DNA of 64,000 nt from IMGVR_UViG_3300029993_000005:124001-188000, one strand, 5' to 3'; shown: positions 31,500-46,755, counted from the first letter of the stretch. Notes: generated from the letters alone by a model not told the origin. A program made the numbers and translations.

Positions 31500-32117
31500 T
31501 TACGCGACAGAAGGTGCAGCCCACACAATGGCTTGAACTGCGTCCACTGGATTAGGCGTAGCGTTGGTAACGGCCATGATCTGACCTGCTAACACAATGT
31601 TCTGCTGGATATTAGCCAATTTCGAAGCTACGAAGTCAGAGCCTACCTGTTGGATTTGTGCAGCCGTGTGGGCACGCATTTCCCAGTTACCGGTGGAGTC
31701 TGCGCACCAGAACGTAGTAGTCCATCCTGCCGCCTGACTAGCAGCCAACTGCGACAGGGTGATTTCCCCGTTAAGATTCAGTTGATCTTGTAGCTGAGAC
31801 GGGTATGTGTAGGCCTCACCTAATGCACTGGATGTAAAGCCTGCGAAGATCGCGGCCTGACATCCGGCACTAACCAATGCTACCTGTGCGGTCTGAATAC
31901 CCGTTAGGCCGATCAGCAGAATCTCTACTTCTTCGACGGTGAGAGTGCCCGCTGTATCCGCCCAGTATTCCGTGCGGTCGGCCACATTAGCCGAATAGGG
32001 ATTCCATGTTGGGCTGATACCGTATTGGCTAACGAATGTCGACGGCAGCTCAGGTCTGGAATAACCTTGTCCTTCTGGGGTCAGTGGGTAGACTAAAGCT
32101 GAATACATGGTTGTCAT
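31500..32117 (-). CDS. DUF4376-like tail fibre assembly/tip protein (paralogue of 30536..31144)
   Basis: Near-identical N-terminus MTTMYS.LVYPLTPEG.GYS. Confidence 0.75.
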   Translation of the reverse strand: MTTMYSALVYPLTPEGQGYSRPELPSTFVSQYGISPTWNPYSANVADRTEYWADTAGTLTVEEVEILLIGLTGIQTAQVALVSAGCQAAIFAGFTSSALGEAYTYPSQLQDQLNLNGEITLSQLAASQAAGWTTTFWCADSTGNWEMRAHTAAQIQQVGSDFVASKLANIQQNIVLAGQIMAVTNATPNPVDAVQAIVWAAPSVA

Positions 32118-32130
32118 TTCATTTCCTTAA

Positions 32131-34212
32131 TTACATGTTGACGCCGAGATTGCCATTGTTGACCGAAGCGCCTGCGAAGAGGGTGGCCGTTAGAACCGTA
32201 CCTGCGACCACCGTATCACCACTGTAGGTTATGACGTTGGTTGTCGTCGACGTGTTACCTATTGCAAAGATACCAGTCATAGAATTGCCAGCGGCATTAC
32301 CGAAAGACGTTGTGGTCGTTAGGCCCGTACCAGCGACAACTGTTGCACCAGAATACGTAAAGGTGTTTGTCGTCGAAGTGCTGTTACCTAAAGCGAAGAT
32401 ACCTATGTTGCCGTTACCTGCGGCCATACCGCGATAAGCACTGGTACTCAGAGACGTGCTGGAGGCAACAGTGTTTCCGCTGTATGTGTAAGCATCTGTG
32501 GCGGCCGACGTGTTCGAAATCGCAAAGATACCGGTTGTCGAATTACCTGCTGCCGTACCTGCAATCATGTTGCCCGTCAACCCCGTACCTGCCGCAGTGG
32601 TATCACCGCTATAGGTTAGGATGTTGGTTGTGGTCGAAGAGTTACCCATTGCAAATATACCGACCGTGGTATTACCAGCAGCCCCACCACCACCCAACAC
32701 AGCGGTTAATGCGGTCGATGCCACCACACCAGCCGTCGCAAACGTAAACGCGTTCATCGTTGTGCTACCAGACGATCCGCCTAATGCCAGATAACCTATT
32801 GAGCTTGTACCCGCACCCGCACCACTGCTAACGTTGGCCGTCATTGCTGTCGAGGCTGCAACCAAGTTACCGCTATACGTGTATTTGTTTGATGTCGTAG
32901 TGGTGTTACCAGTGGCAAATATTGAGTACGTACCATCTGGGTTTTTGAACTGCGTGAGCGATGCGAGTAACGTGTAGGTCGCGCTTGCTGTTTTAAGAAT
33001 CGTGAATGTGTACTGGTCTACACCATTCTGATTACCCGTGCTCGGGGTTATACCACCCAACCACCGGGGAGTTATTGCTGTACCGTCTATCTCGAACGCA
33101 TTAGCAACATATGCGGTAGTACCCTGGGTAGCCATCAGCACGGCCGTCATCGAATCACCAACAGACATCGCAGTGTTCAGCGAGGTCGACGACGAGAACG
33201 CAAAGTTTATAGTCCAGTTGTTTGCTGCGTTGGTGGTGTAATACTGAACCTTACCACTTGCCAGATATAGATTCTGCGTTGAGCTAGGAGCTGCACCTAC
33301 CACATCTGCAAGGTCCGTGGTGTTAGTAAGCTTGATTGCCTGAGCTGTTGCTGAACCATTGAATATCTGTGTAGTTGAATAAGGACTACCTGAACCACCG
33401 CTTGGTGCCGTCGACTGCCAAGTTGTACCGTTGGATGTTAATACGTTTCCAGAAGTACCTGGAGCTACAGTTTGTAGTGCTGACGTTCCATTACCTAACA
33501 ATACATCATTGGCTGCTAGCGTTGCAGCCCCCGTACCGCCCGATGCTACACCTAAAGCGGTTCCAATATTCAGCGCACCTCCGATACCCACACCGCCCGT
33601 AACAACTAAGGCCCCAGTGGAACTAGACGTTGAGGCTGTCGAAGCCGTGACAGTCGTTGCCCCATTGGACGTCAGGGTCGTGAAGGCCCCCGTACTCGGT
33701 GTAGTCGAGCCAACGGGAGTCCCATTCAAGGCTGCAATAGTTAATGAATTAGCATTAATTGCACCGCTTACACCTAGGCCTCCAGTAATAACCAAGGTGC
33801 CTGTCGTTGTGGACGACGAAGCAGTGCCAGCGGTCATTGTTACTGCCCCCGATGCAGCCAAAGTGGTGAATGAAGCAGTGGATGCGGTAGAACTACCGAT
33901 TGGAGTATTTTGCAAAGAACCTGCGTACACAGCACCACTAATACCTAGGCCCCCAGTAATAACTAGAGTTCCTGTCGTAGTGCTAGTGCTTGCTGTTCCT
34001 GCTGTTAAAGTCGAGGCACCTGAGGCCGTCAACGTAGTAAATGATGCAGCACTTCCATTACCCGTAATTTGGATGATAGCCGATCCAGTACCCACATAAA
34101 GCAAACCTGAAGACAAATTAACAGCTAGTTGCCCGGCTACCAATTCATCTGATCCAGGTACTAGTCCCGGACTTGAACTTCTTTTTAACTGGACAACTGC
34201 AGTCATGATCAC
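32131..34212 (-). CDS. Tail fibre: gp37-like N-terminus + S/T-rich shaft + W.GG.P domain + ~41-aa repeat propeller-like tip
   Basis: VQLKRSSSPGLVPGSDELVAGQLAVN; PRWLGGITPSTGNQNGVDQYTF; AAGNSTTGIFA...TYSG.TV..GT.L repeats. Confidence 0.75.
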   Translation of the reverse strand: MIMTAVVQLKRSSSPGLVPGSDELVAGQLAVNLSSGLLYVGTGSAIIQITGNGSAASFTTLTASGASTLTAGTASTSTTTGTLVITGGLGISGAVYAGSLQNTPIGSSTASTASFTTLAASGAVTMTAGTASSSTTTGTLVITGGLGVSGAINANSLTIAALNGTPVGSTTPSTGAFTTLTSNGATTVTASTASTSSSTGALVVTGGVGIGGALNIGTALGVASGGTGAATLAANDVLLGNGTSALQTVAPGTSGNVLTSNGTTWQSTAPSGGSGSPYSTTQIFNGSATAQAIKLTNTTDLADVVGAAPSSTQNLYLASGKVQYYTTNAANNWTINFAFSSSTSLNTAMSVGDSMTAVLMATQGTTAYVANAFEIDGTAITPRWLGGITPSTGNQNGVDQYTFTILKTASATYTLLASLTQFKNPDGTYSIFATGNTTTTSNKYTYSGNLVAASTAMTANVSSGAGAGTSSIGYLALGGSSGSTTMNAFTFATAGVVASTALTAVLGGGGAAGNTTVGIFAMGNSSTTTNILTYSGDTTAAGTGLTGNMIAGTAAGNSTTGIFAISNTSAATDAYTYSGNTVASSTSLSTSAYRGMAAGNGNIGIFALGNSTSTTNTFTYSGATVVAGTGLTTTTSFGNAAGNSMTGIFAIGNTSTTTNVITYSGDTVVAGTVLTATLFAGASVNNGNLGVNM

Positions 34213-34257
34213 CCCTTAGTATTTTGCTTGTTCCTCACCCTGTCATAAAATTGCACC

Positions 34258-35061
34258 TTACTTATATAGGCCTTTCAGGATTTCTTTTGCTTTTTCATAC
34301 TTAGATTTATCCTTGGCCGATGCATTGCCGCCCTGGCGATTAACGTAGAAATTTAACCTTTCCATGGCTTTAGCTTCACTATCGGATGCACGTTTCAAGG
34401 TCTTTGCTATGTGATCAGCGCTCTTTGTGAACGTACCTTCTGGAACAACTCCGTGTTCAGGTTTCACGTCTTTAATCCATTTATCCGCCTCAACTTCTAC
34501 ACTACCTATAGACGTGCTGTTACCTGGGTTTTGCAATGAGTTATAAATAGAGGCCTCAAGTTTTTCGACCTCAACTAAGCGTAGAGCTGCTTTGATACTT
34601 AATTTATCATTCGGCATTTGCAAATCCTTTAATTGATCTTCTAGGATTCCTAAGCCACCACCTACAGGATCATCTAGGTTATGACCTGGTGGCAGTGCGT
34701 ATAAAGGGTATCCAGCGCTAGCAGTTTCTGCAGGTTGCCCATAGGCTTGTCGTAATGCGTTCTTTGCATCGTAGAGACGGGCTTTATCCCCACCTTGAAG
34801 ATTACGCCCCTGGCTGTTTATATACCCAGAAAGTTTTGACATCGCCTGCTTGTAGTCCGTCGAATGCTGCTTCAATACATGAGCAATTTCAGAAGCACTT
34901 TTTGTGTACGTACCCTCAGGCAACACCTGATCTGGTTTTCGGGCCTTACCTTTGTAGCCCTGCTTCATTTCCCGCTGCCACTGGTAGTTCTTATTATTGT
35001 TTGGCGGATCAGTTACCTGAGTTTCAGCCAAGAGACGATGCACAGCTTTGCTGAGGTTCAT
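34258..35061 (-). CDS. Protein with two DUF3175-like domains
   Basis: Two copies of V.PEGT(Y/F)TKSA..IA..LK......AM..L..Y.N.QG.N....DK.....AK..L. Confidence 0.55.
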   Translation of the reverse strand: MNLSKAVHRLLAETQVTDPPNNNKNYQWQREMKQGYKGKARKPDQVLPEGTYTKSASEIAHVLKQHSTDYKQAMSKLSGYINSQGRNLQGGDKARLYDAKNALRQAYGQPAETASAGYPLYALPPGHNLDDPVGGGLGILEDQLKDLQMPNDKLSIKAALRLVEVEKLEASIYNSLQNPGNSTSIGSVEVEADKWIKDVKPEHGVVPEGTFTKSADHIAKTLKRASDSEAKAMERLNFYVNRQGGNASAKDKSKYEKAKEILKGLYK

Positions 35062-35075
35062 TTAGCAGTCCTATA

Positions 35076-35675
35076 TTAGATAGAAGTTTTAGAGAGCCAC
35101 CCAGTCGTCACATCGTAGGCTTCCCACTGTTCAACTGTAGTGAGCTTAACTATTGCTTCGTGATGAACTTTCTCATTAGAGAAATTCTGTTGAATAACAG
35201 ATGTCACGGCCGTACACAACTTGTTAGCTTGTTGAGGATTAATAGTTAGCCATACATTGTTTGGGGCCTTGAAGTCAATTGAGGATCCGGACCCATAATT
35301 AGCTAAGTCTCTAAGATAAAGCCACGTAGTGTTATCGACTACTAGTGAGGCCCCGTTCATAGCGATTTCAATATCCTGACAAGCTAGCCAACGTTTATTT
35401 GCTACCTTGGTCAGAAGAATTTTCTGCCCTTCTGTTACTGTTACTGGCGTCTGAATCCAAGTCTTGACATAGGAAATTCCTTGTTCCTCAGGTACGCCTT
35501 CTACAGTAGTTATAAACATTGAGGCTTGCGGCTTTGGTGTAGCTATTAACTCTGCAACGTCAAAACCTTGAAGGTGATGTGCTTTTAATTCTGCCGGAAA
35601 TGATACTAATGGGTGTCTTAATCGAAGTTCCGTTTCAGACATTACTGTTTTTGTTTTACGATCAATCAACAACAT
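35076..35675 (-). CDS. DUF4376-like tail fibre assembly protein
   Basis: ELRLRHPLVSFP...; DFKAPNNVWLTI...V...F..E...I...D.T.GW. Confidence 0.65.
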   Translation of the reverse strand: MLLIDRKTKTVMSETELRLRHPLVSFPAELKAHHLQGFDVAELIATPKPQASMFITTVEGVPEEQGISYVKTWIQTPVTVTEGQKILLTKVANKRWLACQDIEIAMNGASLVVDNTTWLYLRDLANYGSGSSIDFKAPNNVWLTINPQQANKLCTAVTSVIQQNFSNEKVHHEAIVKLTTVEQWEAYDVTTGWLSKTSI

Positions 35676-35712
35676 TGTTCCCCCTAGCTACCGATGTTTT
35701 GAGTGCAGGCCA

Positions 35713-36588
35713 TTAGGTACCATTTACATTATAGACTCCGTTAGAACAGGCTTCCGTCAGGTTTAAAGCTGCGGTTAAAGAGGTACCTGTAGCCACAGCA
35801 CTAGTTGAATAGTTGTAAGTGTTCGTGCCTGCTGTGGAGGCACCTCTAGCTATAACACCCAAACTTGAATTACCTGCCGCTGCTCCCGCTTGGACATCCG
35901 CCGTTGCAGTACCCGCAGTTACTGCATCAGACGAATAAGTGTAAACACGAGACACACCATTGTTACTTGCAAAAAACACACCAAACGTAGAGTTTCCACA
36001 TGCACATCCATTACCTGATGAAACCACGCCCAAGCCCGTACCCGAGGCAACGGTTGCTGCCCCATACTGGTACTTAGAAGTAGTAGCATTACCTGCTCCA
36101 GCACCCGCAGAGAATACGCCCTGTGTTGAGTTACCCGCAGCACCCCCTGTGTTATTGAATGATGATAGATTCAAAGATGTAGCAGCTGCGGTAACTGCAC
36201 TACTATAAGTGTAGGAATTGGTGATGTCCGTGCCACCACCCCTAGCAAAAATCCCAATAGTAGAATTACCTGCAGCCAAGCCTTCACTTACATTATTAAT
36301 AAATGAAGTGCCAGCAGCTATTGAACTACTACTCCAGGTATAAGTGTTGGATATCTTCCCACCACCAATGGAAAATATGCCAACGTTATAGGTGCCAGCC
36401 GCAGACATCCCAGAGTTGCCCACAGTTGCAGTTAATGAAGCACCCGTGGCAACCCCGTTAGTGCTAAAAGTATAGACGTCGGTCACACCGCCTACAGTCA
36501 ATGCAAATACCCCATAGGTACCATCAGGAGGACCCGGCGGTACATACGGAGTTTTCTTGCTAGCTAACAAAAAGGTAAAGTTTGCCAT
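35713..36588 (-). CDS. Stand-alone ~41-aa repeat propeller-like adhesin/tip protein
   Basis: Repeats AAGNSTxGIFA.G...T..YTYSS..V.AGT.L. Confidence 0.65.
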   Translation of the reverse strand: MANFTFLLASKKTPYVPPGPPDGTYGVFALTVGGVTDVYTFSTNGVATGASLTATVGNSGMSAAGTYNVGIFSIGGGKISNTYTWSSSSIAAGTSFINNVSEGLAAGNSTIGIFARGGGTDITNSYTYSSAVTAAATSLNLSSFNNTGGAAGNSTQGVFSAGAGAGNATTSKYQYGAATVASGTGLGVVSSGNGCACGNSTFGVFFASNNGVSRVYTYSSDAVTAGTATADVQAGAAAGNSSLGVIARGASTAGTNTYNYSTSAVATGTSLTAALNLTEACSNGVYNVNGT

Positions 36589-36589
36589 T

Positions 36590-39500
36590 TTATGTTTCCA
36601 TGTTCAAACCGATCACAAACACCATGTAGTAGCCACCGACCGTATCCCACATAATGCCTAACACATCATTACCCGAGGCTGTTAAGGCTGGTGCTGTTCC
36701 ACCGGCAAACTGAGTACCCGAGGGCCAATTAATAGTTTGTGATCCGCCATTACCTATGCGAAGGAAAGCCACTTGTCCCGTTGAAGCCCCCAAAGTATTA
36801 GTGAAAGCAAACGTCGTTGTCCCGGTAACTGAAATTACCCACTCGCTTGCTAATCCTAAGTTCAATGTTTGTGTCCCGGACGTGGCTCCCAAATTAACTA
36901 CGCTGTAGCTGTATGCGGGACTCTGAACACGACCGGTAAATGACGGGCTGCTTAAGCTGGCCGGAGTGTATGTTAATGCTGTTGTAACATCAGAACTAGT
37001 CAGTGTAACAGCACCTGTTCTGGAATTAAAACTAGTTACACCAGCACCACTAACCGCAGCAGTAACAAAAGCCGTCGTTGCTACCTGAGTTGTGTTGGTA
37101 CCCGACGTAGCTGTTGGCGCTGTTGGAACTCCGGTTAACGCCGGACTAGCTAGAAGTGCACCGCCAGCGCCTGTGATGTCAGCACTACTCAGAGTTACTG
37201 TTCCTGAACGCGTATTGAACGATGTCACTGCAGATGCGCTTACTTGAGCCTGGACAAATGCTGTGGTTGCCAACTGGGTTGTATTCGTGCCTGTCGTGGC
37301 CGTCGGTGCGGTCGGCACACCTAATATACCTGGGCTTGTTGTTGGCAACGGTGTATAACCCAATGCGGTTATTACGTCACCCGAGACCAGACTTACAGCA
37401 CCAGTGCGCGTGTTGAAACTAGTTACTACACCAGAACTAATTGCAGCCTGGACAAAGGCCGTAGACGCAGCTTGTGTTGTTGACGTTCCTGTTGTTGCTG
37501 TAGGAACTGCTGGAACACCCGTGAATGTAGGACTAGCCAGTGGTGCTGTGGTTGCCGCATTAGCCGCTGTGTACCCTAGAGCTGATGCAATATCCGAACT
37601 AGTTAAGGTAACAGCACCAGTACGAGAATTAAAACTGGTAACTGCATTGCTAGAAAACGCACTGATCGAGGCATTCACAAAAGCCGTTGTTGCAAGCTGC
37701 GTCGTATTAACTCCAGTCGTAGCTGTCGGTGCCGTTGGTGTGCCAGTAAATGCGGGACTAGCTAATGGAGCAGTTGTTGCAGCATTTGCAGCGGTGTAGG
37801 TTAATGCGGTATTAACATCACTGGCAGTTAATACCACTGCACCAGTACGAGAATTAAAACTAGTTACACCACTAGCACTTGCGGCCACGACGGCATGAAC
37901 AAAAGCGGTTGTTGCCAATTGAGTGCTAGATGTTCCTGTACTAGCGGTTGGTGCCGATGGAACGCCCGTGAAAGTGGGTCCAGCCAATAGGGCACCGCCA
38001 GCATTTGAAATATCTGTGCTAGTTAGAGTTACAGCACCAGTACGAGAATTAAAGCTGGTGACTCCCGCAGGAATATCCGCAATTTGCGTATTTACATAGG
38101 ACTGCGTAGCATAGTTTGCATCATTAGTGAAGGCACTGACATTTGATGGAACAGTGGGGATCGTCGGTTTATTGCTAAGATCTGTGTATGACCCAGTTGA
38201 CGCAACGGTAGCCAAGCCCCCAATATCCGAAGTTGTTAAAACAACGGTTCCAACGCGTCCTGCAACCGACGTCACATCCGAAGTAGTGCCAGAGATGTGT
38301 TGCCATTGACCGCCATTGAACAGCGCTACATCGTTGACACTCCAGTCTGAGTTCCCGTCCAGATCGGTGGTGCCTGCAACACTTACTTTATAGAATTCAC
38401 CTAGAGTCCCTACACCTGAGGTCAAAGTCGGTGTGTTAGTCGCCGCGTTCCACACACCTTCGTAAGTTAGTCCGCCGGTAACACCTGAGAGTGCAGCTTC
38501 AACAAACGCAGTGGTAGCTAATTGGGTTGTGTTCGTGCCGTTTGCTGCCGTAGGACCAGAAGGAATTCCAGTGAATGTAGGACTAGAAATAGGTGCCACC
38601 AGCGATTGGTTGGCCGCCGTGTAACCCAGAGCCGTTGTTATGTCACCAGTGGTAAGAGTTACCGCGCCGGTCCGCCCGTTAAACGACAATACGTTGGCGG
38701 ACACACTAATTGTCCCATCGCTAGCGATAGTCGTACCAAAACCCTGTTTAACACCACCCAATACTGACGAGGTGGCGATGGGTAAACTATAGGGAGCACC
38801 AACACTAATTTCTCCGTTCAAAACAGAAATATTGGCACCAATGGTTACTCCACCCAGAACGGTGGACGTTGCTTCAGGTAATGTGTAGGGGTCATCAACG
38901 GAGATAACTCCATCATTTACTTGAATATTTTGACCAATAACTACACCACCTAGCGTAGACGTAGTGGCTTCCACTAGTTCATAAGGCGCACCAACACTAA
39001 TTGTTCCATCGCCAGCAACACTGACGTTGGCCCCAATCTTTACACCACCTAAAACAGAAGAAGTACTGACCGGAAGTGTATAAGAATTAACGCCTGAGAT
39101 CGTCCCGTCTGAGGCAATCTCAATATTGGCACCTTGTTTAACACCGCCAAGAACTACTGCGGTTGCAACAGGCAACGTGTAGCTAGCTGCATTGGCGCTT
39201 AGTACACCCTCGGCGGTGATCGTCAGGTTGTTCCCCACTATTACTTGACCCAATTGAACAGTGGTCGCAATAACCGGAGTCACAGCCGCTTCTAGTCCTG
39301 GAATATTTGCAATATTAATTTCAACATTGCCAAAACCGTCAGGCGTTTGGTCATTCACTGACGTTATGGTGCTATTCGAAGCAGTGATCGGATAAGCAGC
39401 CCACACTAAGCCTAGTCCCGGTTCAATAATTGAACCCGAAGTCCACAGGGTTCCGTTGCGCCAGAGTTTAGTTGTTGACGGAACAGTCACAGGTACACTT

Positions 39501-39754
39501 ACATCGAAATAAAGTTCTAATGGCGCACCGAAAACAATTCCTTCACATACGAATGTGTAGGGAAGTACGAACCGCCATTGAGAACCATCAAACAAATACA
39601 TACCCTGATCTTGACTACCTGAGGCAACAGGAAGCACTGCTACTTGGTCGGTGACTTGCTGAGGACTTGGCAGGCTAACGACCCATGGAGCATTAACAAT
39701 TGCCTGCTGGGTCCCCATATTGAGCGTTACTTGGTAATAGAAATTGCTTTCCAT
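36590..39754 (-). CDS. Long tail fibre with GVTSFNSRTGAV / APLASPTFTGVPTAPT repeats
   Basis: Repeats visible directly; LP.AT..VLGGV repeats; C-terminal INWPSGTQFAGGTAP domain. Confidence 0.85.
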   Translation of the reverse strand: MESNFYYQVTLNMGTQQAIVNAPWVVSLPSPQQVTDQVAVLPVASGSQDQGMYLFDGSQWRFVLPYTFVCEGIVFGAPLELYFDVSVPVTVPSTTKLWRNGTLWTSGSIIEPGLGLVWAAYPITASNSTITSVNDQTPDGFGNVEINIANIPGLEAAVTPVIATTVQLGQVIVGNNLTITAEGVLSANAASYTLPVATAVVLGGVKQGANIEIASDGTISGVNSYTLPVSTSSVLGGVKIGANVSVAGDGTISVGAPYELVEATTSTLGGVVIGQNIQVNDGVISVDDPYTLPEATSTVLGGVTIGANISVLNGEISVGAPYSLPIATSSVLGGVKQGFGTTIASDGTISVSANVLSFNGRTGAVTLTTGDITTALGYTAANQSLVAPISSPTFTGIPSGPTAANGTNTTQLATTAFVEAALSGVTGGLTYEGVWNAATNTPTLTSGVGTLGEFYKVSVAGTTDLDGNSDWSVNDVALFNGGQWQHISGTTSDVTSVAGRVGTVVLTTSDIGGLATVASTGSYTDLSNKPTIPTVPSNVSAFTNDANYATQSYVNTQIADIPAGVTSFNSRTGAVTLTSTDISNAGGALLAGPTFTGVPSAPTASTGTSSTQLATTAFVHAVVAASASGVTSFNSRTGAVVLTASDVNTALTYTAANAATTAPLASPAFTGTPTAPTATTGVNTTQLATTAFVNASISAFSSNAVTSFNSRTGAVTLTSSDIASALGYTAANAATTAPLASPTFTGVPAVPTATTGTSTTQAASTAFVQAAISSGVVTSFNTRTGAVSLVSGDVITALGYTPLPTTSPGILGVPTAPTATTGTNTTQLATTAFVQAQVSASAVTSFNTRSGTVTLSSADITGAGGALLASPALTGVPTAPTATSGTNTTQVATTAFVTAAVSGAGVTSFNSRTGAVTLTSSDVTTALTYTPASLSSPSFTGRVQSPAYSYSVVNLGATSGTQTLNLGLASEWVISVTGTTTFAFTNTLGASTGQVAFLRIGNGGSQTINWPSGTQFAGGTAPALTASGNDVLGIMWDTVGGYYMVFVIGLNMET
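37011..37177. repeat. 167-bp perfect repeat copy 1 (copy 2 at 44696-44862)
   Basis: Base-by-base identity GCACCTGTTC...GCCTGTGAT between two fibre genes. Confidence 0.9.
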
Positions 39755-39798
39755 GTCATGTCCTTAACTTTTATTTTGATTGATTTTTAATCACGATT

Positions 39799-40473
39799 TC
39801 ACCACTGCAGGCACGCATTCACTGCATTTAATACAGGTAGACGCAAAGGAACTGTGGAAGTACTGCCATTGATAATGTTTGTGGTGACCGTGAATTCATC
39901 AGCATCTGCATGCGCGTTCAGTCCATTAATATCCCAGAACCAACCGGCGCTTAAGAACGCATCAGTAGGCTGACCAACTAATTCTGGATTAGCTACAATA
40001 TGCCCATCGCCATACACCGATTTATCGTAAGCCGCATAATTGTTTCTGAACGTTAGATGGAAGCCACCGTGTCCACGGAAAGCCCAGCCATCACCAGAAT
40101 CAGCATCACCGTTGCCATTACGATTAGCATAGACAAGATTTGCCAGCTTCTGAGGATTGTTAATATAGTCAGGCGCGTAAGCATAATTTGTATGTGTAGG
40201 GTCCATAGTAAATCTGGAAGGCCAAACAGTAACCAAACGTTCAGGAGTGGTGTAATTCAAATTCTCCGACCAGAAGGTAAAACCTTGAGTTTCGTAAAGC
40301 GATTGAGCTACGAAATAACGGACACGTCGTGGCTCCTGATCAATTTGGAATCGGGCCATCGTCGCGTTGATAGCATCAGTTAGGGCTTGAACTTGATTCG
40401 GGTCCTGAGCTTGCTCCTGACCCACTTTCGGGGCTAGCTGTTGAAGTTGTATCGTTGTTATCGAAAACGGCAT
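39799..40473 (-). CDS. Endolysin, glycoside hydrolase family 19-like
   Basis: FVAQSLYETQGF..WSENLNY...DGWAFRGHG..HLT..NNY...SAGWFW...INGS; RBS GGAGGT before ATG 40473. Confidence 0.85.
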   Translation of the reverse strand: MPFSITTIQLQQLAPKVGQEQAQDPNQVQALTDAINATMARFQIDQEPRRVRYFVAQSLYETQGFTFWSENLNYTTPERLVTVWPSRFTMDPTHTNYAYAPDYINNPQKLANLVYANRNGNGDADSGDGWAFRGHGGFHLTFRNNYAAYDKSVYGDGHIVANPELVGQPTDAFLSAGWFWDINGLNAHADADEFTVTTNIINGSTSTVPLRLPVLNAVNACLQW

Positions 40474-40897
40474 TGTGACCTCCATCAATATATAAAAGAG
40501 CAATCGTGAAAGATTGCTCTGTGTAACGTATTGGATTTAATTTGTATTGAACAATCAGCGATACTGTGTACAGTCCATCCTCTAGGTCACCTGGAACCGT
40601 CACCTCATAGGCCATGTCTTTTACATCGTCTATGAGGAGTTCCGGGGACACAAGTTTATATTTTTTATTTTCAGATTGAATTATGGACCGCACGTACAAA
40701 GGTCCTGGTAAATCTTGAAGAGCAGGTGTCGGAATATAATTTTCCACTCCACCCTTGAACCTAACCATGGCTGATGGCTCTATATCTAACTGCGGTTGTT
40801 CTCTTATCCAATAGACAGTTGTCCCACCTATTGCTCCTAGCACGCTACATATTAAGGCCAGTGCCAGACTCAATAGAAACCCCTTACGTCTATTCAT
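40376..40897 (-). CDS. Bitopic membrane protein in lysis cassette (paralogue B)
   Basis: N-terminal TM; DGLYTVSLIVQYKLNPI. Confidence 0.6.
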   Translation of the reverse strand: MNRRKGFLLSLALALICSVLGAIGGTTVYWIREQPQLDIEPSAMVRFKGGVENYIPTPALQDLPGPLYVRSIIQSENKKYKLVSPELLIDDVKDMAYEVTVPGDLEDGLYTVSLIVQYKLNPIRYTEQSFTIALLYIDGGHNAVFDNNDTTSTASPESGSGASSGPESSSSPN

Positions 40898-41411
40898 TGC
40901 GCTGTACCTCAGTAACTTGAGGACTTGGACTTGACGTCACGAGTATTCGAGCTAATTGAATTCGTACATTGGCGGTTTTGATTGGATTTAATTTGTATTG
41001 AACATCAACACTAACGCTGTAAGTTCCTGGAGCTAGACTAGAAGGTATCCTAACTGATTGGGCACCCAAGTCCATATGTTGAGGATCTTTGACCCTAACA
41101 TCCGGATACACATAAGCGGTATCCCCGTAAGCATCAACCAACGTTACATGATAGACAGCCATAGACGTATCGGCTGTCAAATGAAAAGGATCAGCCAATT
41201 TTGCTGTTGCTCCGGCAGGAACATCTAGCGTAGTGACTGATCTTCGATCCAAATTATTTAGTGTTGGCTTCTGGGTGTACCAGAAAACACTGATGGCCAT
41301 CGCCGCCGGGACTATACACATAGAGGATACTGCAAAGGCTGTGTCTGCTATGTGGAAAGCTTTGACCACCAACGCATGTTTAGCTACTTTTGATGCGAGC
41401 GTGATTAACAC
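40890..41411 (-). CDS. Bitopic membrane protein in lysis cassette (paralogue A)
   Basis: TM near N-terminus; PGTYSVSVDVQYKLNPI. Confidence 0.6.
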   Translation of the reverse strand: MLITLASKVAKHALVVKAFHIADTAFAVSSMCIVPAAMAISVFWYTQKPTLNNLDRRSVTTLDVPAGATAKLADPFHLTADTSMAVYHVTLVDAYGDTAYVYPDVRVKDPQHMDLGAQSVRIPSSLAPGTYSVSVDVQYKLNPIKTANVRIQLARILVTSSPSPQVTEVQRNE

Positions 41412-41426
41412 GATTGCTCCTCCTTG

Positions 41427-41822
41427 CTATTCTATCTTTGGCGGTTCATTGCTGTTAATGATGATTGTGGTGTTTGCCGTAGCATTTGACTTGGAATTAG
41501 ACTTAGAGCTTGATCCATCCTCATCTTCAATGCCTAATCTTCTCTTGATGATGTTTTCAAATTCTTTCCAGGCTCTGTTGCCCATTAGGCCAGCAACCGC
41601 AATCAAAACCCCCATCAACGGACCCGTTGTGTTCGTCCATTCACAGAGCCAGAAAGTAACTAGTCCTGTGAATCCGCTTGTAACCACGTCTCGTGCAAAA
41701 CTAGCAGGGCTAAATTTGGAAGCACTATTTAAATACTTCACTGCCCCACCAGCACATGCAACACCAATTACCCATATATAAGTGACGAGACTGTAGCCGA
41801 ATGGGTCTTTGTCGCCAACCAT
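41427..41822 (-). CDS. Holin (LydA / holin_3_3-like, 3 TM)
   Basis: YIWVIGVACAGGAVKYL...VVTSGFTGLVTFWLCE...LIAVAGLMGNRA. Confidence 0.8.
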   Translation of the reverse strand: MVGDKDPFGYSLVTYIWVIGVACAGGAVKYLNSASKFSPASFARDVVTSGFTGLVTFWLCEWTNTTGPLMGVLIAVAGLMGNRAWKEFENIIKRRLGIEDEDGSSSKSNSKSNATANTTIIINSNEPPKIE

Positions 41823-41910
41823 AGGAACCCCTATTCGTTAACTGCTGCTATTTTGAGTTTTCGGATTTCTATTCTGCTGTAATTAAATTGGGGATTAGCC
41901 TAATTTTAGA

Positions 41911-41920
41911 TAGTAAATAA
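41911..41920 (+). promoter_or_regulatory. Candidate phage promoter motif TAGTAAATA (also 49613, 55772, 60390, and CAGTAAATA at 63568)
   Basis: Recurs in short intergenic gaps upstream of + strand genes. Confidence 0.45.
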
Positions 41921-41943
41921 GGGATACAAATGGAGAACCGCAA

Positions 41944-42252
41944 ATGAAATTCAACACTAACCAAGCCTCTATTTCCTGCTTGGTATCGGCTTCAGCCCAA
42001 GCTCAGAACACAGATGAAACATTGCTTCCAGTATTCAATCGAATACTTACGGAGGAAATTAAGTTTGCGACCGAAAACACAGAGTTAGACCAGTTGCTAC
42101 ATAGCGTCAATAAGAGAGTGGCTATTAGATTTGGACCTAGATTTTATGTGTGGACGGCTGACGCAGATACAGAACAACGAGCGTGCGACAATTCACAAGA
42201 ATTAGTATTGATCTTGGACTCGGTGAATCCCACCTCTTTTACCCTTCAGTGA
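41944..42252 (+). CDS. Hypothetical protein
   Basis: 102-aa ORF after TAGTAAATA motif. Confidence 0.5.
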   Translation: MKFNTNQASISCLVSASAQAQNTDETLLPVFNRILTEEIKFATENTELDQLLHSVNKRVAIRFGPRFYVWTADADTEQRACDNSQELVLILDSVNPTSFTLQ

Positions 42253-42283
42253 TCACTGACCAGTAACTACTGTTGATAAATTT

Positions 42284-43207
42284 ATGACCAATATAAAAAG
42301 AGAACGTCTGTTTGTAGTGGACGGTAATTGGGCCCTACACAAAGCAGCATCCACACTCCACACAAATCGTCCGATTGAGGATGCGCTCCCCTATCACCTG
42401 TTAGGTATCATAATTAAAGATGCACTGGCATTGCGCGCACCTTACTTGTGTGTTGCATTTGATGGACCCGATGTATTCAGGTACAAGGTCTATCCTGGAT
42501 ACAAGGCGAGCCGCAAATTAGGAAAGGCTAAGCGCAAGGCTGAAACAACCAAAAATAGTTCAGCTAGTGACAGAGCCGTCAACGAACTCTACAGTTATTT
42601 GCCATGTATCTATAAATTGTTTGACGAATTAGGCATCGTCTACTATCAACCGCCAACATTCGAAGCTGATGATGTACTGGCGTCTGTAGCTTTTAAATAT
42701 GGCGGCGTCCATGAGGTATTGATTGGCACCAAAGACAAAGATGCTAATCAATATTTGATGCCCCATGTACGATTGACCTACACGTACAGGGATAAAGATA
42801 AAAATACAAAACGGGTGTTTATTACGCATGACGATGTTGAAGCTAAATTTGGGTTACGCGCTGACCAAATGGTGGACTATCAAACATTGATTGGGGACAA
42901 GGGTGATGATGTTCCTGCAATCAAAGGCTTTAGTCCAGCTAGGGCAAAGAAAGTGCTGACCGAGTTCGGAACATTGTCCAACTGGTATAAGAAATCTACA
43001 GGTGACGAAAAAGCGTTCATCACGTCTCAATTAGAGAATTTGAGACGCAATAGAAAACTCGTTCATCTGGTGACTAATTGTCCACCACCGAACGAATTGA
43101 ACGAATGGAAAATCCCGAAGATTAAGCCAACAAATAAATGGTTAAGTCGCACCTATCACGAGTTCCATGCTATGTGCTGGCCTAAGTCTAAGGGACTCTT
43201 TGGTTGA
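42284..43207 (+). CDS. 5'-3' exonuclease / flap endonuclease (PolA 5'-nuclease / T4 RNase H-like)
   Basis: FVVDGN, AFDG...FRYKVYPGYKASR, FEADDVLAS, TKDKDANQ, LIGDKGDDVPAIKG. Confidence 0.92.
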   Translation: MTNIKRERLFVVDGNWALHKAASTLHTNRPIEDALPYHLLGIIIKDALALRAPYLCVAFDGPDVFRYKVYPGYKASRKLGKAKRKAETTKNSSASDRAVNELYSYLPCIYKLFDELGIVYYQPPTFEADDVLASVAFKYGGVHEVLIGTKDKDANQYLMPHVRLTYTYRDKDKNTKRVFITHDDVEAKFGLRADQMVDYQTLIGDKGDDVPAIKGFSPARAKKVLTEFGTLSNWYKKSTGDEKAFITSQLENLRRNRKLVHLVTNCPPPNELNEWKIPKIKPTNKWLSRTYHEFHAMCWPKSKGLFG

Positions 43208-44086
43208 TTACATATTGACACCCGAGCAGCCATCGCTAGCACCGGCACCCGCACGCAAGTTCCCAACCAGCGAACCTCCAACTGTAGTCACCCCGCTGGA
43301 GTAGGTGTAAGTAGATGTTGCTTGTGTGCCGGATGAGATGTTTCCTAAAGCAAATATACCTAATGTCGAATTACCGGCAGCAGCCCCTTCGTTACTTGTT
43401 GAACTTAGCGCTGTTCCCGCACCTACAGTATTGCCTGAGTAGGTGTATTTGTACGTAGTAGTGAGTGAGTCACCTCGCGCAAATATGCCGAACGTAGAAT
43501 CCCCAACAGCAGTACCGCTATCAACGAATAAGGTAAGTGCGGTACCTGTCGCCACAGTGTTACCTGAATAGGTGTACACATCGGTAGAGGTGAACGTACC
43601 ACCCTGAGCAAACACACCCAAAGTTGCGTTACCCGCTGCACCTCCGTAGTTAGCAGCAAATGTTAGATTTGTGCCAGCCGTCGTCGCGTTAGTACCCCAC
43701 GTGTACGTATTGGTTACATGCCCGGAGCTACCTAAAGAAAACACTCCAACAGTAGAATTTCCTGCAGCGGCACCCCCGTTCACTGTGGCGGTAAGAGATG
43801 TTGCTGGACTGACTATAGAAGCATAGTAGCTGTAGTTATAGCTAACGGTGCTTAAAGCAAATATACCGTTCGTGCTAGTACCTGCCGCCGCACCAGCGGT
43901 GCCCCCAGGACTTAAGGAACCACCGACAGCAGTTGTAGCTCCTGAGTAGAAATAGACATTGGTAACACTAGGTGCCTCAGTGCCCATTGCAAATACTGCC
44001 ATGGTTTGTGGAACACCACGGTCTCCAGGGAGAAGCGAAGCACTAGCACTTGCCAACAAAAGAAGCATTATGTCATTCATGTTCAA
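43208..44086 (-). CDS. Stand-alone repeat propeller-like adhesin/tip protein (paralogue of 35713..36588)
   Basis: AAGNSTLGIFALG...TYTYSGNTV..GT.L repeats; ATGA overlap with upstream fibre. Confidence 0.65.
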   Translation of the reverse strand: MNMNDIMLLLLASASASLLPGDRGVPQTMAVFAMGTEAPSVTNVYFYSGATTAVGGSLSPGGTAGAAAGTSTNGIFALSTVSYNYSYYASIVSPATSLTATVNGGAAAGNSTVGVFSLGSSGHVTNTYTWGTNATTAGTNLTFAANYGGAAGNATLGVFAQGGTFTSTDVYTYSGNTVATGTALTLFVDSGTAVGDSTFGIFARGDSLTTTYKYTYSGNTVGAGTALSSTSNEGAAAGNSTLGIFALGNISSGTQATSTYTYSSGVTTVGGSLVGNLRAGAGASDGCSGVNM

Positions 44087-46755
44087 GCCTCGATGTTCAG
44101 ACCAATTACAAATACCATATAGGTCGAACTAGTCGTGTCGTAACGGACGGCCACCAAATCAACACCCGACGCGGTGAAAGTAGGTGCTGTTCCTCCATTT
44201 GCGAACTGAGTACCCGACGGCCAACTGATGGTCGACGAACCCCCGTTAGTTATCCGCAAGCAGATGATCTGTGATAGACCGGCAGCCAGCGTATTAGTGA
44301 AGGCAAAAGTCAAAGCCCCAGTCACAGTCAACGTCCATTCGGTAGCGGATACTAAGTTCAACGTCTGTGTACCCGACACTGAACCTAGAGCAACCACAGT
44401 GTAGCTGGAGGCCACCGTCTCTACACGTCCCGTAAACTGTGGGCTAGCAATTGGCGCACCGCCTACACCAGTCACGTCAGAAAGTTGCAACGTAACGGCA
44501 CCTGTACGAGTATTGAAGCTTGTAACAGAAGCTGAACTAAGTTCATTCAGAACAAACGCGCAGGTTGCTAATTGGGTGCTATTGGTTCCATTTGCTGCGG
44601 TTGGTGCCTGTGGAATTCCCGTGAATGTTGGGCTAATTAAGTTAGCAGGCGTATAAGTCAGTGCACCAGTTACGTCCGTAAAACTTAGGTTCACCGCACC
44701 TGTTCTGGAATTAAAACTAGTTACACCAGCACCACTAACCGCAGCAGTAACAAAAGCCGTCGTTGCTACCTGAGTTGTGTTGGTACCCGACGTAGCTGTT
44801 GGCGCTGTTGGAACTCCGGTTAACGCCGGACTAGCTAGAAGTGCACCGCCAGCGCCTGTGATATCTGAAGCTTCAAAAGTAATGGCCCCGGTTCTTGAGT
44901 TAAAACTTGTTACTCCAGCTGATGCAGCAATAGCGGAAGTAACAAAAGCTGTGGTCGCCAACTGAGTATTGTTGGTGCCCACCGTTGCCGTTGGTGCCGT
45001 AGGCGTACCTGTGAACGCTGGACTAGCAATGTTGGCCGGAGTGTACGTTAGAGCCGTCGTTATATCTGAATTGGTTAGAGTTACTGCCCCTGTTCTCCCA
45101 TTAAATGAAGTGACACCGGAACCGGCAATAGCAGAAGCAACAAAAGCAGTGGTTGCTAATTGATTCGTTGACGTGCCAGGCGTAGCCGTTGGAGCCGAAG
45201 GAACACCTGTAAATGTAGGGCTGGCTAGCAGTGCTCCACCTACACCAGAAATATCCGAGGCTAAAAAGGTGATAGCCCCTGTTCTTGAATTAAAAGAAGT
45301 AACAACACCTGAGGCTAATGTGGCCTCGACAAAAGCGGTTGTTGCTATTTGTGTGGTCGAGGTACCCAGGCTTGCTGTCGGAGCTGTCGGTACACCAGTC
45401 AACGAAGGATTAGCCAACGGAGCATAACTGTTGGAAATAAATGCCGTCGTTGCTAGTTGCGTAGTGGACGTACCTGGACTAGCAGTTGGTGCCGTAGGAA
45501 TCCCTGTAAATGCAGGACTAGCCAACAAGGCTCCACCAACACCCGTTAAATCGGAAACCAAGAAAGTCACTGCACCCGTTCTGGAATTGAAAGATGTGAC
45601 TGTATTTAATCCCAATTCAGCTAGGACAAAGGCTGTGGTTGCGATCTGGGTATTGTTGGTGCCTAGACTTGCTGTAGGGGCCGCAGGAACGCCTGTAAAT
45701 GTAGGGCTGGCTAACGGTGCGGGATTAAAACCCAAGGCCGTTGTGACGTCTCCTGACGCTAATACTATGGCCCCCGTTCTTGAATTAAAAGAAGTCACTG
45801 GCGAACTGGAAGCCGCTACATTCAACAGACCGCCAGAAGTAATGGTCAAGGTGTCACCAATCTGGACAACACCTAATTGCGTGGTTGTCGCTATTTGGGG
45901 ACTAGGTGCCACACTAGTTGCGGTTCTTTCAAAGACCGAGAACAGGTCTCCAACAATTGGAGGACTCATTAAAGGGTTGACGAAACCCAGAGTCACGAAA
46001 TTTCCACTGATCACCGTTGTCTGAACATAGCGACAAATACTGTACAAGTTCCCGGTCACAAATTCCAGAATGACCTGACCTAGATACGAAGGGGTCATTG
46101 CTTCAACGTAGTCGGACAGGGCAATAGTCACCGACTGTGTGTCGAACGAAGTGATGGTCGCCGTTGCTTGGTTAGCAAAATTGTAGGCATCGAAATTCCA
46201 CAGGCCCGTCTGATTTGTGTAGGCTAGAAATGACGATTGATAATTCGTTATTCCGCTGATCACATAAGCATTAGGAGTTGCCTGGTTGCTCGGCGGTAAA
46301 TAGTCAGGACTACCTAGAACAGCCATGCGGAACGCGTTATCGGACTCAGCGAATTGCAACCACATCGCGTAGTTTTGTCCCACCATCGATAGATAGCAGT
46401 CGATCCGGATAGAATTACCTGGCGGTGTAATTGCAGCTGCTAATTTGACTACCAATTCGTTACCAGCACCCAAAGCGAATAGTGTGCCGTCCTCAGTGAA
46501 CAGTCCTACTTCACCGAAAGAGAAAGGTCCGAGTTCAGCATTCAGGAACAAAGAATAAACAACTATGTTGGCTGTGACCGGTGTTGGCAAACTCGGTGTC
46601 ATTGAGAATACCAAGGATCCATGAATGTTGGTATCTGTTGCTTCAGGCACGTAATTAAAGGCAGATCCTAATTCGGCAGTAGTAATAGTGATAGGACCTG
46701 TATCCGCGTTTAGAAGAGCGGCACCCGCGTCCGTCAGTTGAAATAGAAAGCTCAT
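44083..46755 (-). CDS. Long tail fibre with DUF3751-like anchor and SFNSRTGA/ASPTFTG repeats
   Basis: FQLTDAGAALLNA...GPFSFGEVGLFTEDGTLFALG; C-terminal ISWPSGTQFANGGTAP. Confidence 0.85.
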   Translation of the reverse strand: MSFLFQLTDAGAALLNADTGPITITTAELGSAFNYVPEATDTNIHGSLVFSMTPSLPTPVTANIVVYSLFLNAELGPFSFGEVGLFTEDGTLFALGAGNELVVKLAAAITPPGNSIRIDCYLSMVGQNYAMWLQFAESDNAFRMAVLGSPDYLPPSNQATPNAYVISGITNYQSSFLAYTNQTGLWNFDAYNFANQATATITSFDTQSVTIALSDYVEAMTPSYLGQVILEFVTGNLYSICRYVQTTVISGNFVTLGFVNPLMSPPIVGDLFSVFERTATSVAPSPQIATTTQLGVVQIGDTLTITSGGLLNVAASSSPVTSFNSRTGAIVLASGDVTTALGFNPAPLASPTFTGVPAAPTASLGTNNTQIATTAFVLAELGLNTVTSFNSRTGAVTFLVSDLTGVGGALLASPAFTGIPTAPTASPGTSTTQLATTAFISNSYAPLANPSLTGVPTAPTASLGTSTTQIATTAFVEATLASGVVTSFNSRTGAITFLASDISGVGGALLASPTFTGVPSAPTATPGTSTNQLATTAFVASAIAGSGVTSFNGRTGAVTLTNSDITTALTYTPANIASPAFTGTPTAPTATVGTNNTQLATTAFVTSAIAASAGVTSFNSRTGAITFEASDITGAGGALLASPALTGVPTAPTATSGTNTTQVATTAFVTAAVSGAGVTSFNSRTGAVNLSFTDVTGALTYTPANLISPTFTGIPQAPTAANGTNSTQLATCAFVLNELSSASVTSFNTRTGAVTLQLSDVTGVGGAPIASPQFTGRVETVASSYTVVALGSVSGTQTLNLVSATEWTLTVTGALTFAFTNTLAAGLSQIICLRITNGGSSTISWPSGTQFANGGTAPTFTASGVDLVAVRYDTTSSTYMVFVIGLNIEA
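44696..44862. repeat. 167-bp perfect repeat copy 2
   Basis: Identical to 37011-37177. Confidence 0.9.

What the first reader, a model, noticed from the sequence alone, without database searches (positions are those of the whole stretch)
32131..46755. Same fibre-tip module appears once fused and twice split into fibre + coupled propeller gene
Seen: the 693-aa fibre has a W.GG..P...G.D domain followed directly by ~41-aa AAGNSTxGIFA...TYSG.TV repeats. The 1054-aa and 890-aa fibres end in a similar WPSGTQFA.G.AP....G.D domain, and each is immediately followed (1-nt gap at 36589; ATGA overlap at 44083-44086) by a separate ~291-aa gene made of the same repeats. Inference (Rosetta-stone logic): the W-GG-P domain is a docking site for a swappable beta-propeller adhesin, analogous to T-even gp37/gp38 but a different family. 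The three divergent propellers imply three receptor specificities.
Basis: partly seen in the sequence, partly recalled or inferred. Interest (0 to 1): 0.66.

Follow-up and report, generated by a model that had tools for sequence, protein, structure and literature searches.

The report
Kelch propeller tips on phage fibres
A 230-kb uncultured phage carries three tail fibres that each end in a small knob domain followed by a predicted six-bladed Kelch-type propeller, once fused and twice as a separate downstream gene, which most likely is an exchangeable host-binding tip.

Summary
F693, T291 and T292 each hold six ~43-aa repeats that align blade for blade (38-44% identity). With a 68-sequence alignment, T292 folds confidently (pLDDT 88.8) as a six-bladed Kelch-type propeller (TM 0.77-0.80 to Keap1).

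The fibre end domains are D1 in F693 and D2 in F1054 and F890. BLASTP sees no similarity between them; profile comparison suggests remote homology (HHalign 85.6%, E 5.6e-6). The genome has exactly three propellers and three D domains, always paired.

The Rosetta-stone logic holds for D1. Two unrelated contigs have a D1-ended fibre followed within 1-9 nt by a separate propeller. F693 joins the two at the same residue and lacks the ~25-aa leader.

D1 and D2 are not propeller-specific. They end thousands of fibres, and the tightly following genes have many different folds. Those genes share N-terminal leaders specific to D1 or D2. This points to a distal plug-and-socket system, with the Kelch propeller as one of many cargoes.

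Physical docking was not shown; the complex prediction gave no answer. The ATGA overlap is wrong: an ATG lies 2 nt after the stop.

The parts
32131..34212 (-). F693: fibre with shaft, D1 end domain and fused Kelch-type propeller (GTG start; an ATG lies at codon 3)
32944..33360 (-). D1 domain of F693 (residues 285-423; phrog_5906). In more than 110 relatives it is the very last domain of the fibre
32134..32943 (-). Fused six-blade propeller of F693 (residues 424-693). It starts where the first blade of T291/T292 starts and has no leader
35713..36588 (-). T291: separate six-blade Kelch-type propeller gene, 1 nt after the stop of F1054
36523..36588 (-). T291 N-terminal leader (~22 aa, hydrophobic stretch then Pro-rich linker), absent from the fused form
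   Evidence: weak in the motif test
36590..39754 (-). F1054: long repetitive tail fibre ending in D2
36593..36967 (-). D2 end domain of F1054 (residues 930-1054)
43208..44080 (-). T292: separate six-blade Kelch-type propeller gene (ATG at 44080; alternative TTG at 44086)
44006..44080 (-). T292 N-terminal leader (~25 aa; predicted helix then low-confidence linker). It matches the leader motif enriched after D2 fibres
44083..46755 (-). F890: tail fibre with tail-collar-type N-terminus, repetitive shaft and D2 end domain
44086..44460 (-). D2 end domain of F890 (residues 766-890)
35076..35675 (-). DUF4376 protein directly after T291 (candidate fibre assembly factor)
31500..32117 (-). DUF4376 protein directly after F693 (candidate fibre assembly factor)

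Best explanation
These are three receptor-binding cassettes of a multi-fibre jumbo phage. Each has a repetitive fibre that ends in a small beta-rich knob: D1 in F693, and D2 in F1054 and F890. D1 and D2 are probably remote homologues. Beyond the knob sits a six-bladed Kelch-type propeller that acts as the host-binding tip. The variable B-C and D-A loops would bind the receptor, and the conserved A strands and A-B loops would face the fibre. In F693 the propeller is joined covalently to the last residue of D1. In the two split cassettes the propeller is a translationally coupled separate protein with an extra ~22-25-aa N-terminal leader, which I infer plugs into the knob of the fibre encoded just upstream. 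The knob-plus-leader pair is a general device. In other phages the same knobs are followed by unrelated binding modules that carry the same class of leader, so the propeller is one exchangeable cargo among many. Shown: the gene anatomy, the predicted fold, the homologies, the pairings and the motif enrichments. Inferred: physical docking, presence in the virion and receptor binding.
For: Fold: the AF2 model of T292 has pLDDT 88.8, pTM 0.86 and 24 strands in six blades. Foldseek TM is 0.77-0.80 to Keap1/KLHL Kelch domains. The best viral match is a phage Kelch-motif protein at TM 0.85, and the list includes proteins named virion structural proteins of phiKZ-like phages and CBB. Pairing: the genome holds exactly 3 propellers, 1 D1 and 2 D2, always adjacent. 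Rosetta stone: in L064 and L255 a D1-ended fibre is followed after 1 and 9 nt by a separate propeller. F693 continues from the same last D1 residue straight into blade 1. The L255 pairing was predicted from the leader type before the look-up. An independent D2-then-propeller pair is L179, and L207 has a 169-aa mini version. Leaders at gene level: motif R2 occurs in 33/81 genes after D2 fibres against 11/462 other ORFs, and in 27/53 against 20/536 in new loci. Motif R1 occurs in 37/78 genes after D1 fibres and in 0/81 and 1/53 after D2. R2 occurs in 0/78 after D1. Leaders at family level: 7/24 vs 5/151, p 2e-4 (post hoc); 4/12 new families vs 6/78, p 0.025 with the regex fixed beforehand. The bodies include LamG, Gly_rich_2, DUF7483, WD40-like and LVIVD. 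Variation: 5% of B-C loop columns are identical in all three propellers, against 54% of A-strand columns. Precedent: phiKZ gp298, a Kelch virion protein, is needed for adsorption to some hosts (PMC12676376). In Klebsiella podophages a branching domain on RBP1 and a docking peptide on RBP2 were shown to be interacting partners (PMC13352976).
Against: No binding evidence exists. D1 and D2 mostly occur without a propeller, so the knob may be a receptor-binding end in its own right. Most propeller genes follow other genes: a 123-132-aa protein unrelated to D1/D2 by profile, DUF4376, LamG or non-fibre genes. Tight gene spacing is ordinary in phages. The R2 motif was defined after seeing the data, and the validation is modest (p 0.025, 12 families). 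T291 lacks the R2 motif and scores nothing in a leader profile. T292 ranks only 42nd against 780 control N-termini. The D1 fold match to docking-type domains of CBA120 TSP4 is weak (Z 5.4). Only T292 was modelled; the F693 two-domain model failed.
Confidence: 0.55

Rival explanations
1. The propellers are tail- or baseplate-associated adsorption factors that attach somewhere other than the D knob, as may hold for phiKZ gp298. Their position after the fibre genes would then reflect only cassette-wise inheritance of host-range genes.
For: Family members occur away from D-ended fibres: after a non-fibre gene in a chimallin phage, and after DUF4376, LamG or small proteins. phiKZ gp298 is not near tail genes, and phiKZ shows no D2. 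T291 lacks the leader motif.
Against: Pairing is 3 of 3 in this genome. The covalent fusion in F693 puts the propeller at the fibre end. Leader class follows knob class.
Confidence: 0.2
2. The propeller is a fibre assembly chaperone: a separate Tfa-like factor in the split cassettes and an intramolecular chaperone, possibly cleaved off, in F693.
For: The gene lies immediately downstream of the fibre gene, as for Tfa and T4 gp38. Some D2 fibres elsewhere are followed by a Phage_tail_APC chaperone.
Against: No chaperone family matches the propellers. Separate DUF4376 candidates follow both T291 and F693. A six-blade propeller with hypervariable loops on one face, and tandem arrays of 2-3 paralogues, fit a binding module better.
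Confidence: 0.07
3. The D knobs are themselves the receptor-binding ends. The propellers are accessory lectins or enzymes, for example sugar-modifying Kelch enzymes, that act on the cell surface without being the primary adhesin.
For: Most D-ended fibres have no propeller. Kelch folds include sugar-acting enzymes, and gp298 is said to resemble an N-acetylneuraminate epimerase.
Against: The near-invariant family residues are repeat-structural Gly, Tyr and Asn, with no evident catalytic set. Variation sits in the loops.
Confidence: 0.1

Closest known systems
T-even gp37/gp38 distal fibre plus adhesin (T2, T6, S16 type)
   Same: A separate small adhesin gene lies immediately downstream of the distal fibre gene and is proposed to cap the fibre tip and set host range.
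   Different: The adhesin here is a Kelch-type propeller, not the glycine-rich fold known for gp38 (my own knowledge, not tested here). No family match to gp37 or gp38 was found. A fused form exists in the same genome.
Branched RBP systems of Klebsiella podophages (RBP1 branching domain plus RBP2 conserved docking peptide; PMC6872550, PMC13352976)
   Same: A short conserved N-terminal peptide on the downstream protein, independent of its body fold, pairs with a small domain of the upstream fibre. The cargoes are exchangeable.
   Different: There the socket is named T4gp10-like and belongs to RBP1's anchor and branching module. Here the socket is the extreme C-terminal knob, giving serial rather than lateral attachment. 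The domain and peptide families differ. Binding is proven there and only inferred here.
Kelch-domain virion proteins of jumbo phages (phiKZ gp298, CBB_552, BcepSaruman Kelch-motif protein)
   Same: Stand-alone ~300-335-aa Kelch propellers. gp298 and CBB_552 are virion proteins, and gp298 is needed for adsorption to some hosts. BcepSaruman is the best structural match (TM 0.85) and a weak sequence relative of a family member.
   Different: gp298 shows no detectable sequence homology to this family. It is not next to fibre genes. No fused form or fibre pairing was described for it.
Five-bladed propeller platform of Gram-positive siphophage RBPs (Staphylococcus-phage type, Brochothrix phage NF5; PMC12917162)
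   Same: A beta-propeller serves as the receptor-binding part of a tail fibre protein.
   Different: Five blades, not Kelch-type, internal to one polypeptide, in a different phage group.

Membership tests
Kelch-type six-bladed beta-propeller (fold class) | Six blades of four antiparallel strands | tested here: met
   The AF2 model of T292 has 24 strands in six groups, pLDDT 88.8. T291 and F693 align blade for blade.
Kelch-type six-bladed beta-propeller (fold class) | Structural superposition on solved Kelch domains | tested here: met
   Foldseek E ~1e-13, TM 0.77-0.80 to Keap1 and KLHL3 Kelch domains over ~285 columns.
Kelch-type six-bladed beta-propeller (fold class) | Match to Pfam Kelch sequence models | tested here: not met
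   No Pfam family at E <= 0.1 for T291, T292 or the F693 repeats. No PDB sequence match with the family profile.
T-even gp37/gp38 adhesin system | Adhesin gene directly downstream of the distal fibre gene | tested here: met
   1-nt and 2-nt gaps.
T-even gp37/gp38 adhesin system | Homology of the adhesin to gp38 | tested here: not met
   No Pfam or PHROG match. The fold is a Kelch propeller.
T-even gp37/gp38 adhesin system | Adhesin bound to the fibre tip in the virion | not testable with these tools
   Needs biochemistry or cryo-EM.
Branched RBP system (branching domain plus docking peptide) | Conserved N-terminal peptide on the downstream protein, independent of body fold | tested here: met
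   Leader motifs specific to D1 or D2 are enriched in genes after D1 and D2 fibres. T292 fits; T291 does not fit clearly.
Branched RBP system (branching domain plus docking peptide) | T4gp10-like branching domain in the upstream RBP | tested here: inconclusive
   The D1 part of a poor model matches CBA120 TSP4 N-terminal domains at Z 5.4 and the Pa223 capsid spike at Z 6.8, both below a trustworthy level. D2 was not modelled.
Branched RBP system (branching domain plus docking peptide) | Socket forms part of RBP1's anchor and branching module rather than the fibre's far end (my reading of PMC6872550/PMC13352976; its position in the protein was not checked here) | tested here: not met
   D1 and D2 end 0-2 residues before the C-terminus in nearly all relatives.
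phiKZ gp298-like Kelch adsorption factor | Sequence homology to gp298 | tested here: not met
   hmmsearch score -3.2, HHalign probability 0.04%.
Tail fibre assembly chaperone (Tfa, Phage_tail_APC, DUF4376) | Match to a chaperone family | tested here: not met
   No match for the propellers. DUF4376 is carried by separate neighbouring genes.

The most novel reading that the evidence does not exclude
D1 and D2 knobs, with their class-specific N-terminal leaders, form a widespread and undescribed distal plug-and-socket system. Through it, thousands of phages would hang interchangeable binding modules (Kelch, WD40-like and LVIVD propellers, LamG lectins, glycine-rich domains) on the far end of their fibres. 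F693 would be the natural fusion that gives the pairing away.
Probability: 0.35. Interest if true: 0.8.

Novelty: new variant of a known kind. Interest (0 to 1): 0.62.

Why it matters
If the knob and leader really are a socket and plug, host range in a very large set of uncultured phages could be read as a two-part code: which knob, and which cargo. D2 alone ends fibres in at least 2,486 protein clusters. The natural fused and split forms would mark the domain borders that separate the fibre from its binding tip. The finding also gives a concrete structural role to phage Kelch proteins, whose function was called unknown in jumbo-phage papers (PMC7760394) until the gp298 adsorption result (PMC12676376).

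Tried and rejected
1. Complex prediction of three copies of the F890 D2 domain with T292. The verdict was 'no answer' (score 0.31, mark 0.32), so it is evidence neither for nor against binding.
2. AF2 of F693 residues 275-693 with a mixed alignment (A3) gave a poor model (pLDDT 55.9). Only D1 reached 70-89, probably because the repeats slipped register, so the D1-propeller packing could not be read. The fold search on it gave only weak D1 matches.
3. BLASTP of F693 against F1054 found nothing. Only profiles link D1 and D2.
4. Megablast of the region and tblastn of T291 against cultured phages found nothing. A less repetitive family member found only distant hits in BcepSaruman, BcepSauron and S-SKS1.
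5. The 123-132-aa protein that precedes most podovirus propeller arrays is not related to D1 or D2 (HHalign <1%).
6. The N-terminus of phiKZ gp298 looks like several family leaders, but a leader profile gives it no score. Its propeller is not detectably homologous, and phiKZ shows no D2. It remains a lead only.
7. A leader profile built from non-Kelch proteins ranks L179 15th and T292 42nd against 780 control N-termini. It fails on T291.
8. Two alignments were too diverse for locus searches.

Full report
SETTING. The window is bases 124001-188000 of a 230,110-bp IMG/VR virus record rated 97% complete. No cultured phage matches it at DNA level. The finding lies in a minus-strand block rich in fibre genes. 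A lysis cassette interrupts the block, with a holin at 41427-41822 and an endolysin at 39799-40503, as does one plus-strand exonuclease gene.

OBSERVATION. All five ORFs are as described. F693 (residues ~424-693), T291 and T292 each hold six repeats spaced 40-46 aa apart. They are clear homologues: 44% identity with E 6e-41, and 38% with E 4e-30. They align collinearly blade by blade.

The stop of F1054 is followed by one base and then the ATG of T291. At the F890/T292 junction the text is TGA, AC, ATG, with GAGG 9 nt upstream of the ATG. A TTG overlapping the stop is the alternative start. There is no ATGA.

THE TIP IS A KELCH-TYPE PROPELLER. Pfam and PHROGs give nothing for the repeats. A word-based search found 72 relatives in metagenomes. 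All are unnamed, mostly 290-410 aa, and some carry an N-terminal fn3 domain.

With these as the alignment, AlphaFold2 gives T292 a pLDDT of 88.8 and a pTM of 0.86. The model has 24 strands in six four-stranded blades, an N-terminal helix at residues 3-17 and a low-confidence linker. Foldseek places it on the Keap1 and KLHL Kelch domains (TM 0.77-0.80, E ~1e-13, ~12% identity).

Among viral models the best match is the BcepSaruman Kelch-motif protein (TM 0.85). The list also includes proteins named virion structural proteins in phiKZ-like phages and CBB.

Among the three window paralogues, 54% of A-strand columns and 47% of A-B loop columns are identical in all three. The figure is 5% for B-C loops, which also carry the indels, and 21% for D-A loops. 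In Keap1-type Kelch domains the B-C and D-A loops form the ligand-binding face (established knowledge). The pattern therefore fits a binding module with three specificities.

THE FIBRE END DOMAINS. D1 is F693 residues 285-423 and matches phrog_5906, of unknown function. In more than 110 metagenomic relatives at 45-64% identity it is the very last domain of fibres 380-1040 aa long, ending 0-1 residues before the C-terminus.

D2 is the last 125 aa of F1054 and F890. An exhaustive search found 2,486 cluster representatives at E <= 0.001. In most of the 141 examined, the aligned stretch ends within 5 residues of the C-terminus, in proteins of 76-1722 aa.

BLASTP does not link D1 and D2. Profile-profile comparison does so moderately: 85.6%, E 5.6e-6, 95 columns that run to the C-terminus and include the W..GG.AP...G.D motif. 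The D1 part of a poor model is a small beta-rich domain. Its fold matches are only weak: Pa223 capsid spike end at Z 6.8 and CBA120 TSP4 N-terminal domains at Z 5.4.

IS THE PAIRING REAL? Within this genome there are exactly three propellers, one D1 and two D2, always adjacent.

Elsewhere the picture is mixed. Of 80 viral loci with D1-ended fibres, none has a propeller within 4 kb. Of 80 loci with D2-ended fibres, those outside this phage and its near copies yield only two cases. L179 has a fibre of 1448+ aa, a 46-nt gap and a 301-aa propeller. L207 has a 169-aa protein of three to four Kelch-like repeats.

Conversely, 77 viral loci found with a family member mostly show arrays of 1-3 tandem propeller paralogues. 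These arrays sit behind a conserved 123-132-aa protein or a 74-110-aa protein, not behind D-ended fibres. The 123-132-aa protein is unrelated to D1 and D2 by profile. Other members follow DUF4376, LamG or non-fibre genes, one of them in a chimallin-encoding jumbo phage.

ROSETTA STONE. In L064 a D1-ended fibre stops and, 1 nt later, a 319-aa propeller gene starts. In L255 a 433-aa fibre ends in D1 (211 bits) and a 336-aa propeller follows after 9 nt.

F693 runs on from the same last D1 residue (...TQFK) directly into the first blade. It omits the ~25-aa leader that the split propellers carry. This is a clean fused and split pair for D1. No fused D2-propeller protein was seen among the D2 hits examined.

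LEADERS. I then asked what follows D-ended fibres in general. After D1, 71 of 81 loci have a tightly coupled protein of ~830 aa with Gly_rich_2 and Laminin_G_3 domains. After D2, the tightly coupled genes fall into many unrelated families. These include multi-LamG, DUF7483, WD40-like and LVIVD-like proteins, a tail assembly chaperone, and the Kelch propellers.

Many of them begin alike: an acidic residue, two hydrophobic residues, then an Ala/Gly run. A regex for the first part (R2) matches 33 of 81 genes after D2 fibres, against 11 of 462 other ORFs in the same loci. At family level it matches 7 of 24 against 5 of 151, p 2e-4. That result is post hoc.

I then fetched a second set of loci with other D2 seeds, keeping the regex fixed. 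I counted only families with no homologue in the first set. R2 matched 4 of 12 against 6 of 78, p 0.025. Two more families show the same Ala-run leader without the acidic residue.

Genes after D1 fibres carry a different leader (R1, ending in G-aromatic-G). R1 matches 37 of 78 genes after D1 fibres, and 0 of 81 and 1 of 53 after D2. R2 matches 0 of 78 after D1.

The Kelch propellers follow this rule. L064 and L255, which come after D1, have R1-type leaders. The L255 pairing was predicted from its leader before the look-up. T292 fits R2.

The leaders of T291 and L179 share only a hydrophobic stretch and a Pro-rich linker with T292. In a leader profile built without Kelch proteins, and ranked against 780 control N-termini, L179 comes 15th, L207 13th and T292 42nd. 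T291 does not score.

INTERPRETATION. The best reading is a distal plug-and-socket arrangement. The knob at the fibre end is the socket, the short leader of the next protein is the plug, and the body is an exchangeable binding module. Here that module is a Kelch propeller, and F693 has made the link covalent.

The closest proven mechanism is the branching domain and docking peptide pair of Klebsiella podophages (PMC6872550; PMC13352976). It uses other domain families, and its socket is not the C-terminal end of the fibre.

The closest in gene layout is T-even gp37/gp38.

The closest in fold and role is phiKZ gp298, a Kelch virion protein needed for adsorption to some hosts (PMC12676376), along with CBB_552 (PMC5259590). 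gp298 is not detectably homologous to this family, and phiKZ shows no D2.

A chaperone role for the propellers is unlikely. Separate DUF4376 genes follow both T291 and F693, and the propellers' variable loops and tandem paralogues fit binding.

LIMITS. Nothing here shows binding, virion presence or receptor recognition. The one complex prediction allowed gave no answer. The leader statistics rest on a few dozen families, and my ORF calling is simple.

Noticed in passing
window 36933-37180 vs 44618-44865 (identical 86 nt at 37065-37150 and 44750-44835): The shafts of F1054 and F890 share a 248-nt stretch at 88% identity, with an 86-nt identical core just upstream of the D2 regions. This suggests recent recombination or gene conversion between the two fibre paralogues.
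   Followed up: partly
window 46777-48651 and 44083-46755: The 624-aa fibre upstream of F890 has almost the same tail-collar-type N-terminus as F890 (repeat 46142-46422 vs 48038-48318, 74%). It ends in a Gp53-like_C domain and has no propeller. This looks like two fibres with one attachment module and different ends.
   Followed up: partly
window 39799-41822: A lysis cassette sits between two fibre cassettes: a holin, two 173-aa proteins with hydrophobic N-termini, and an endolysin. A lone plus-strand exonuclease gene (42284-43207) lies next to T292.
   Followed up: no
L013, L017, L050, L057, L060 and others (IMG/VR podovirus-like contigs); L256: Kelch propeller genes often come in tandem arrays of two or three paralogues (~395 aa with fn3, ~315 aa, ~340 aa). 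The three in L256 share one leader type. Some members have Cys-rich insertions in the B-C loops.
   Followed up: partly
L207:3439-3948: A 169-aa protein with only three to four Kelch-like repeats overlaps the stop of a 217-aa D2-ended fibre. It might form a propeller by oligomerisation.
   Followed up: no
L197:487-1503 and L237:4311-5501: Other D2-ended fibres are followed by WD40-like and LVIVD-like proteins. Different propeller families therefore occupy the same genomic slot as the Kelch tips.
   Followed up: partly
NC_020851.1 202008-202826 (L253:5182-6000): Synechococcus phage S-SKS1 has a Kelch-like match at 29% identity to a family member, in a stretch with no annotated gene. The record holds seven matching places.
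   Followed up: no
window 34204-34212: F693 is called from a GTG. An ATG two codons downstream is an alternative start.
   Followed up: no
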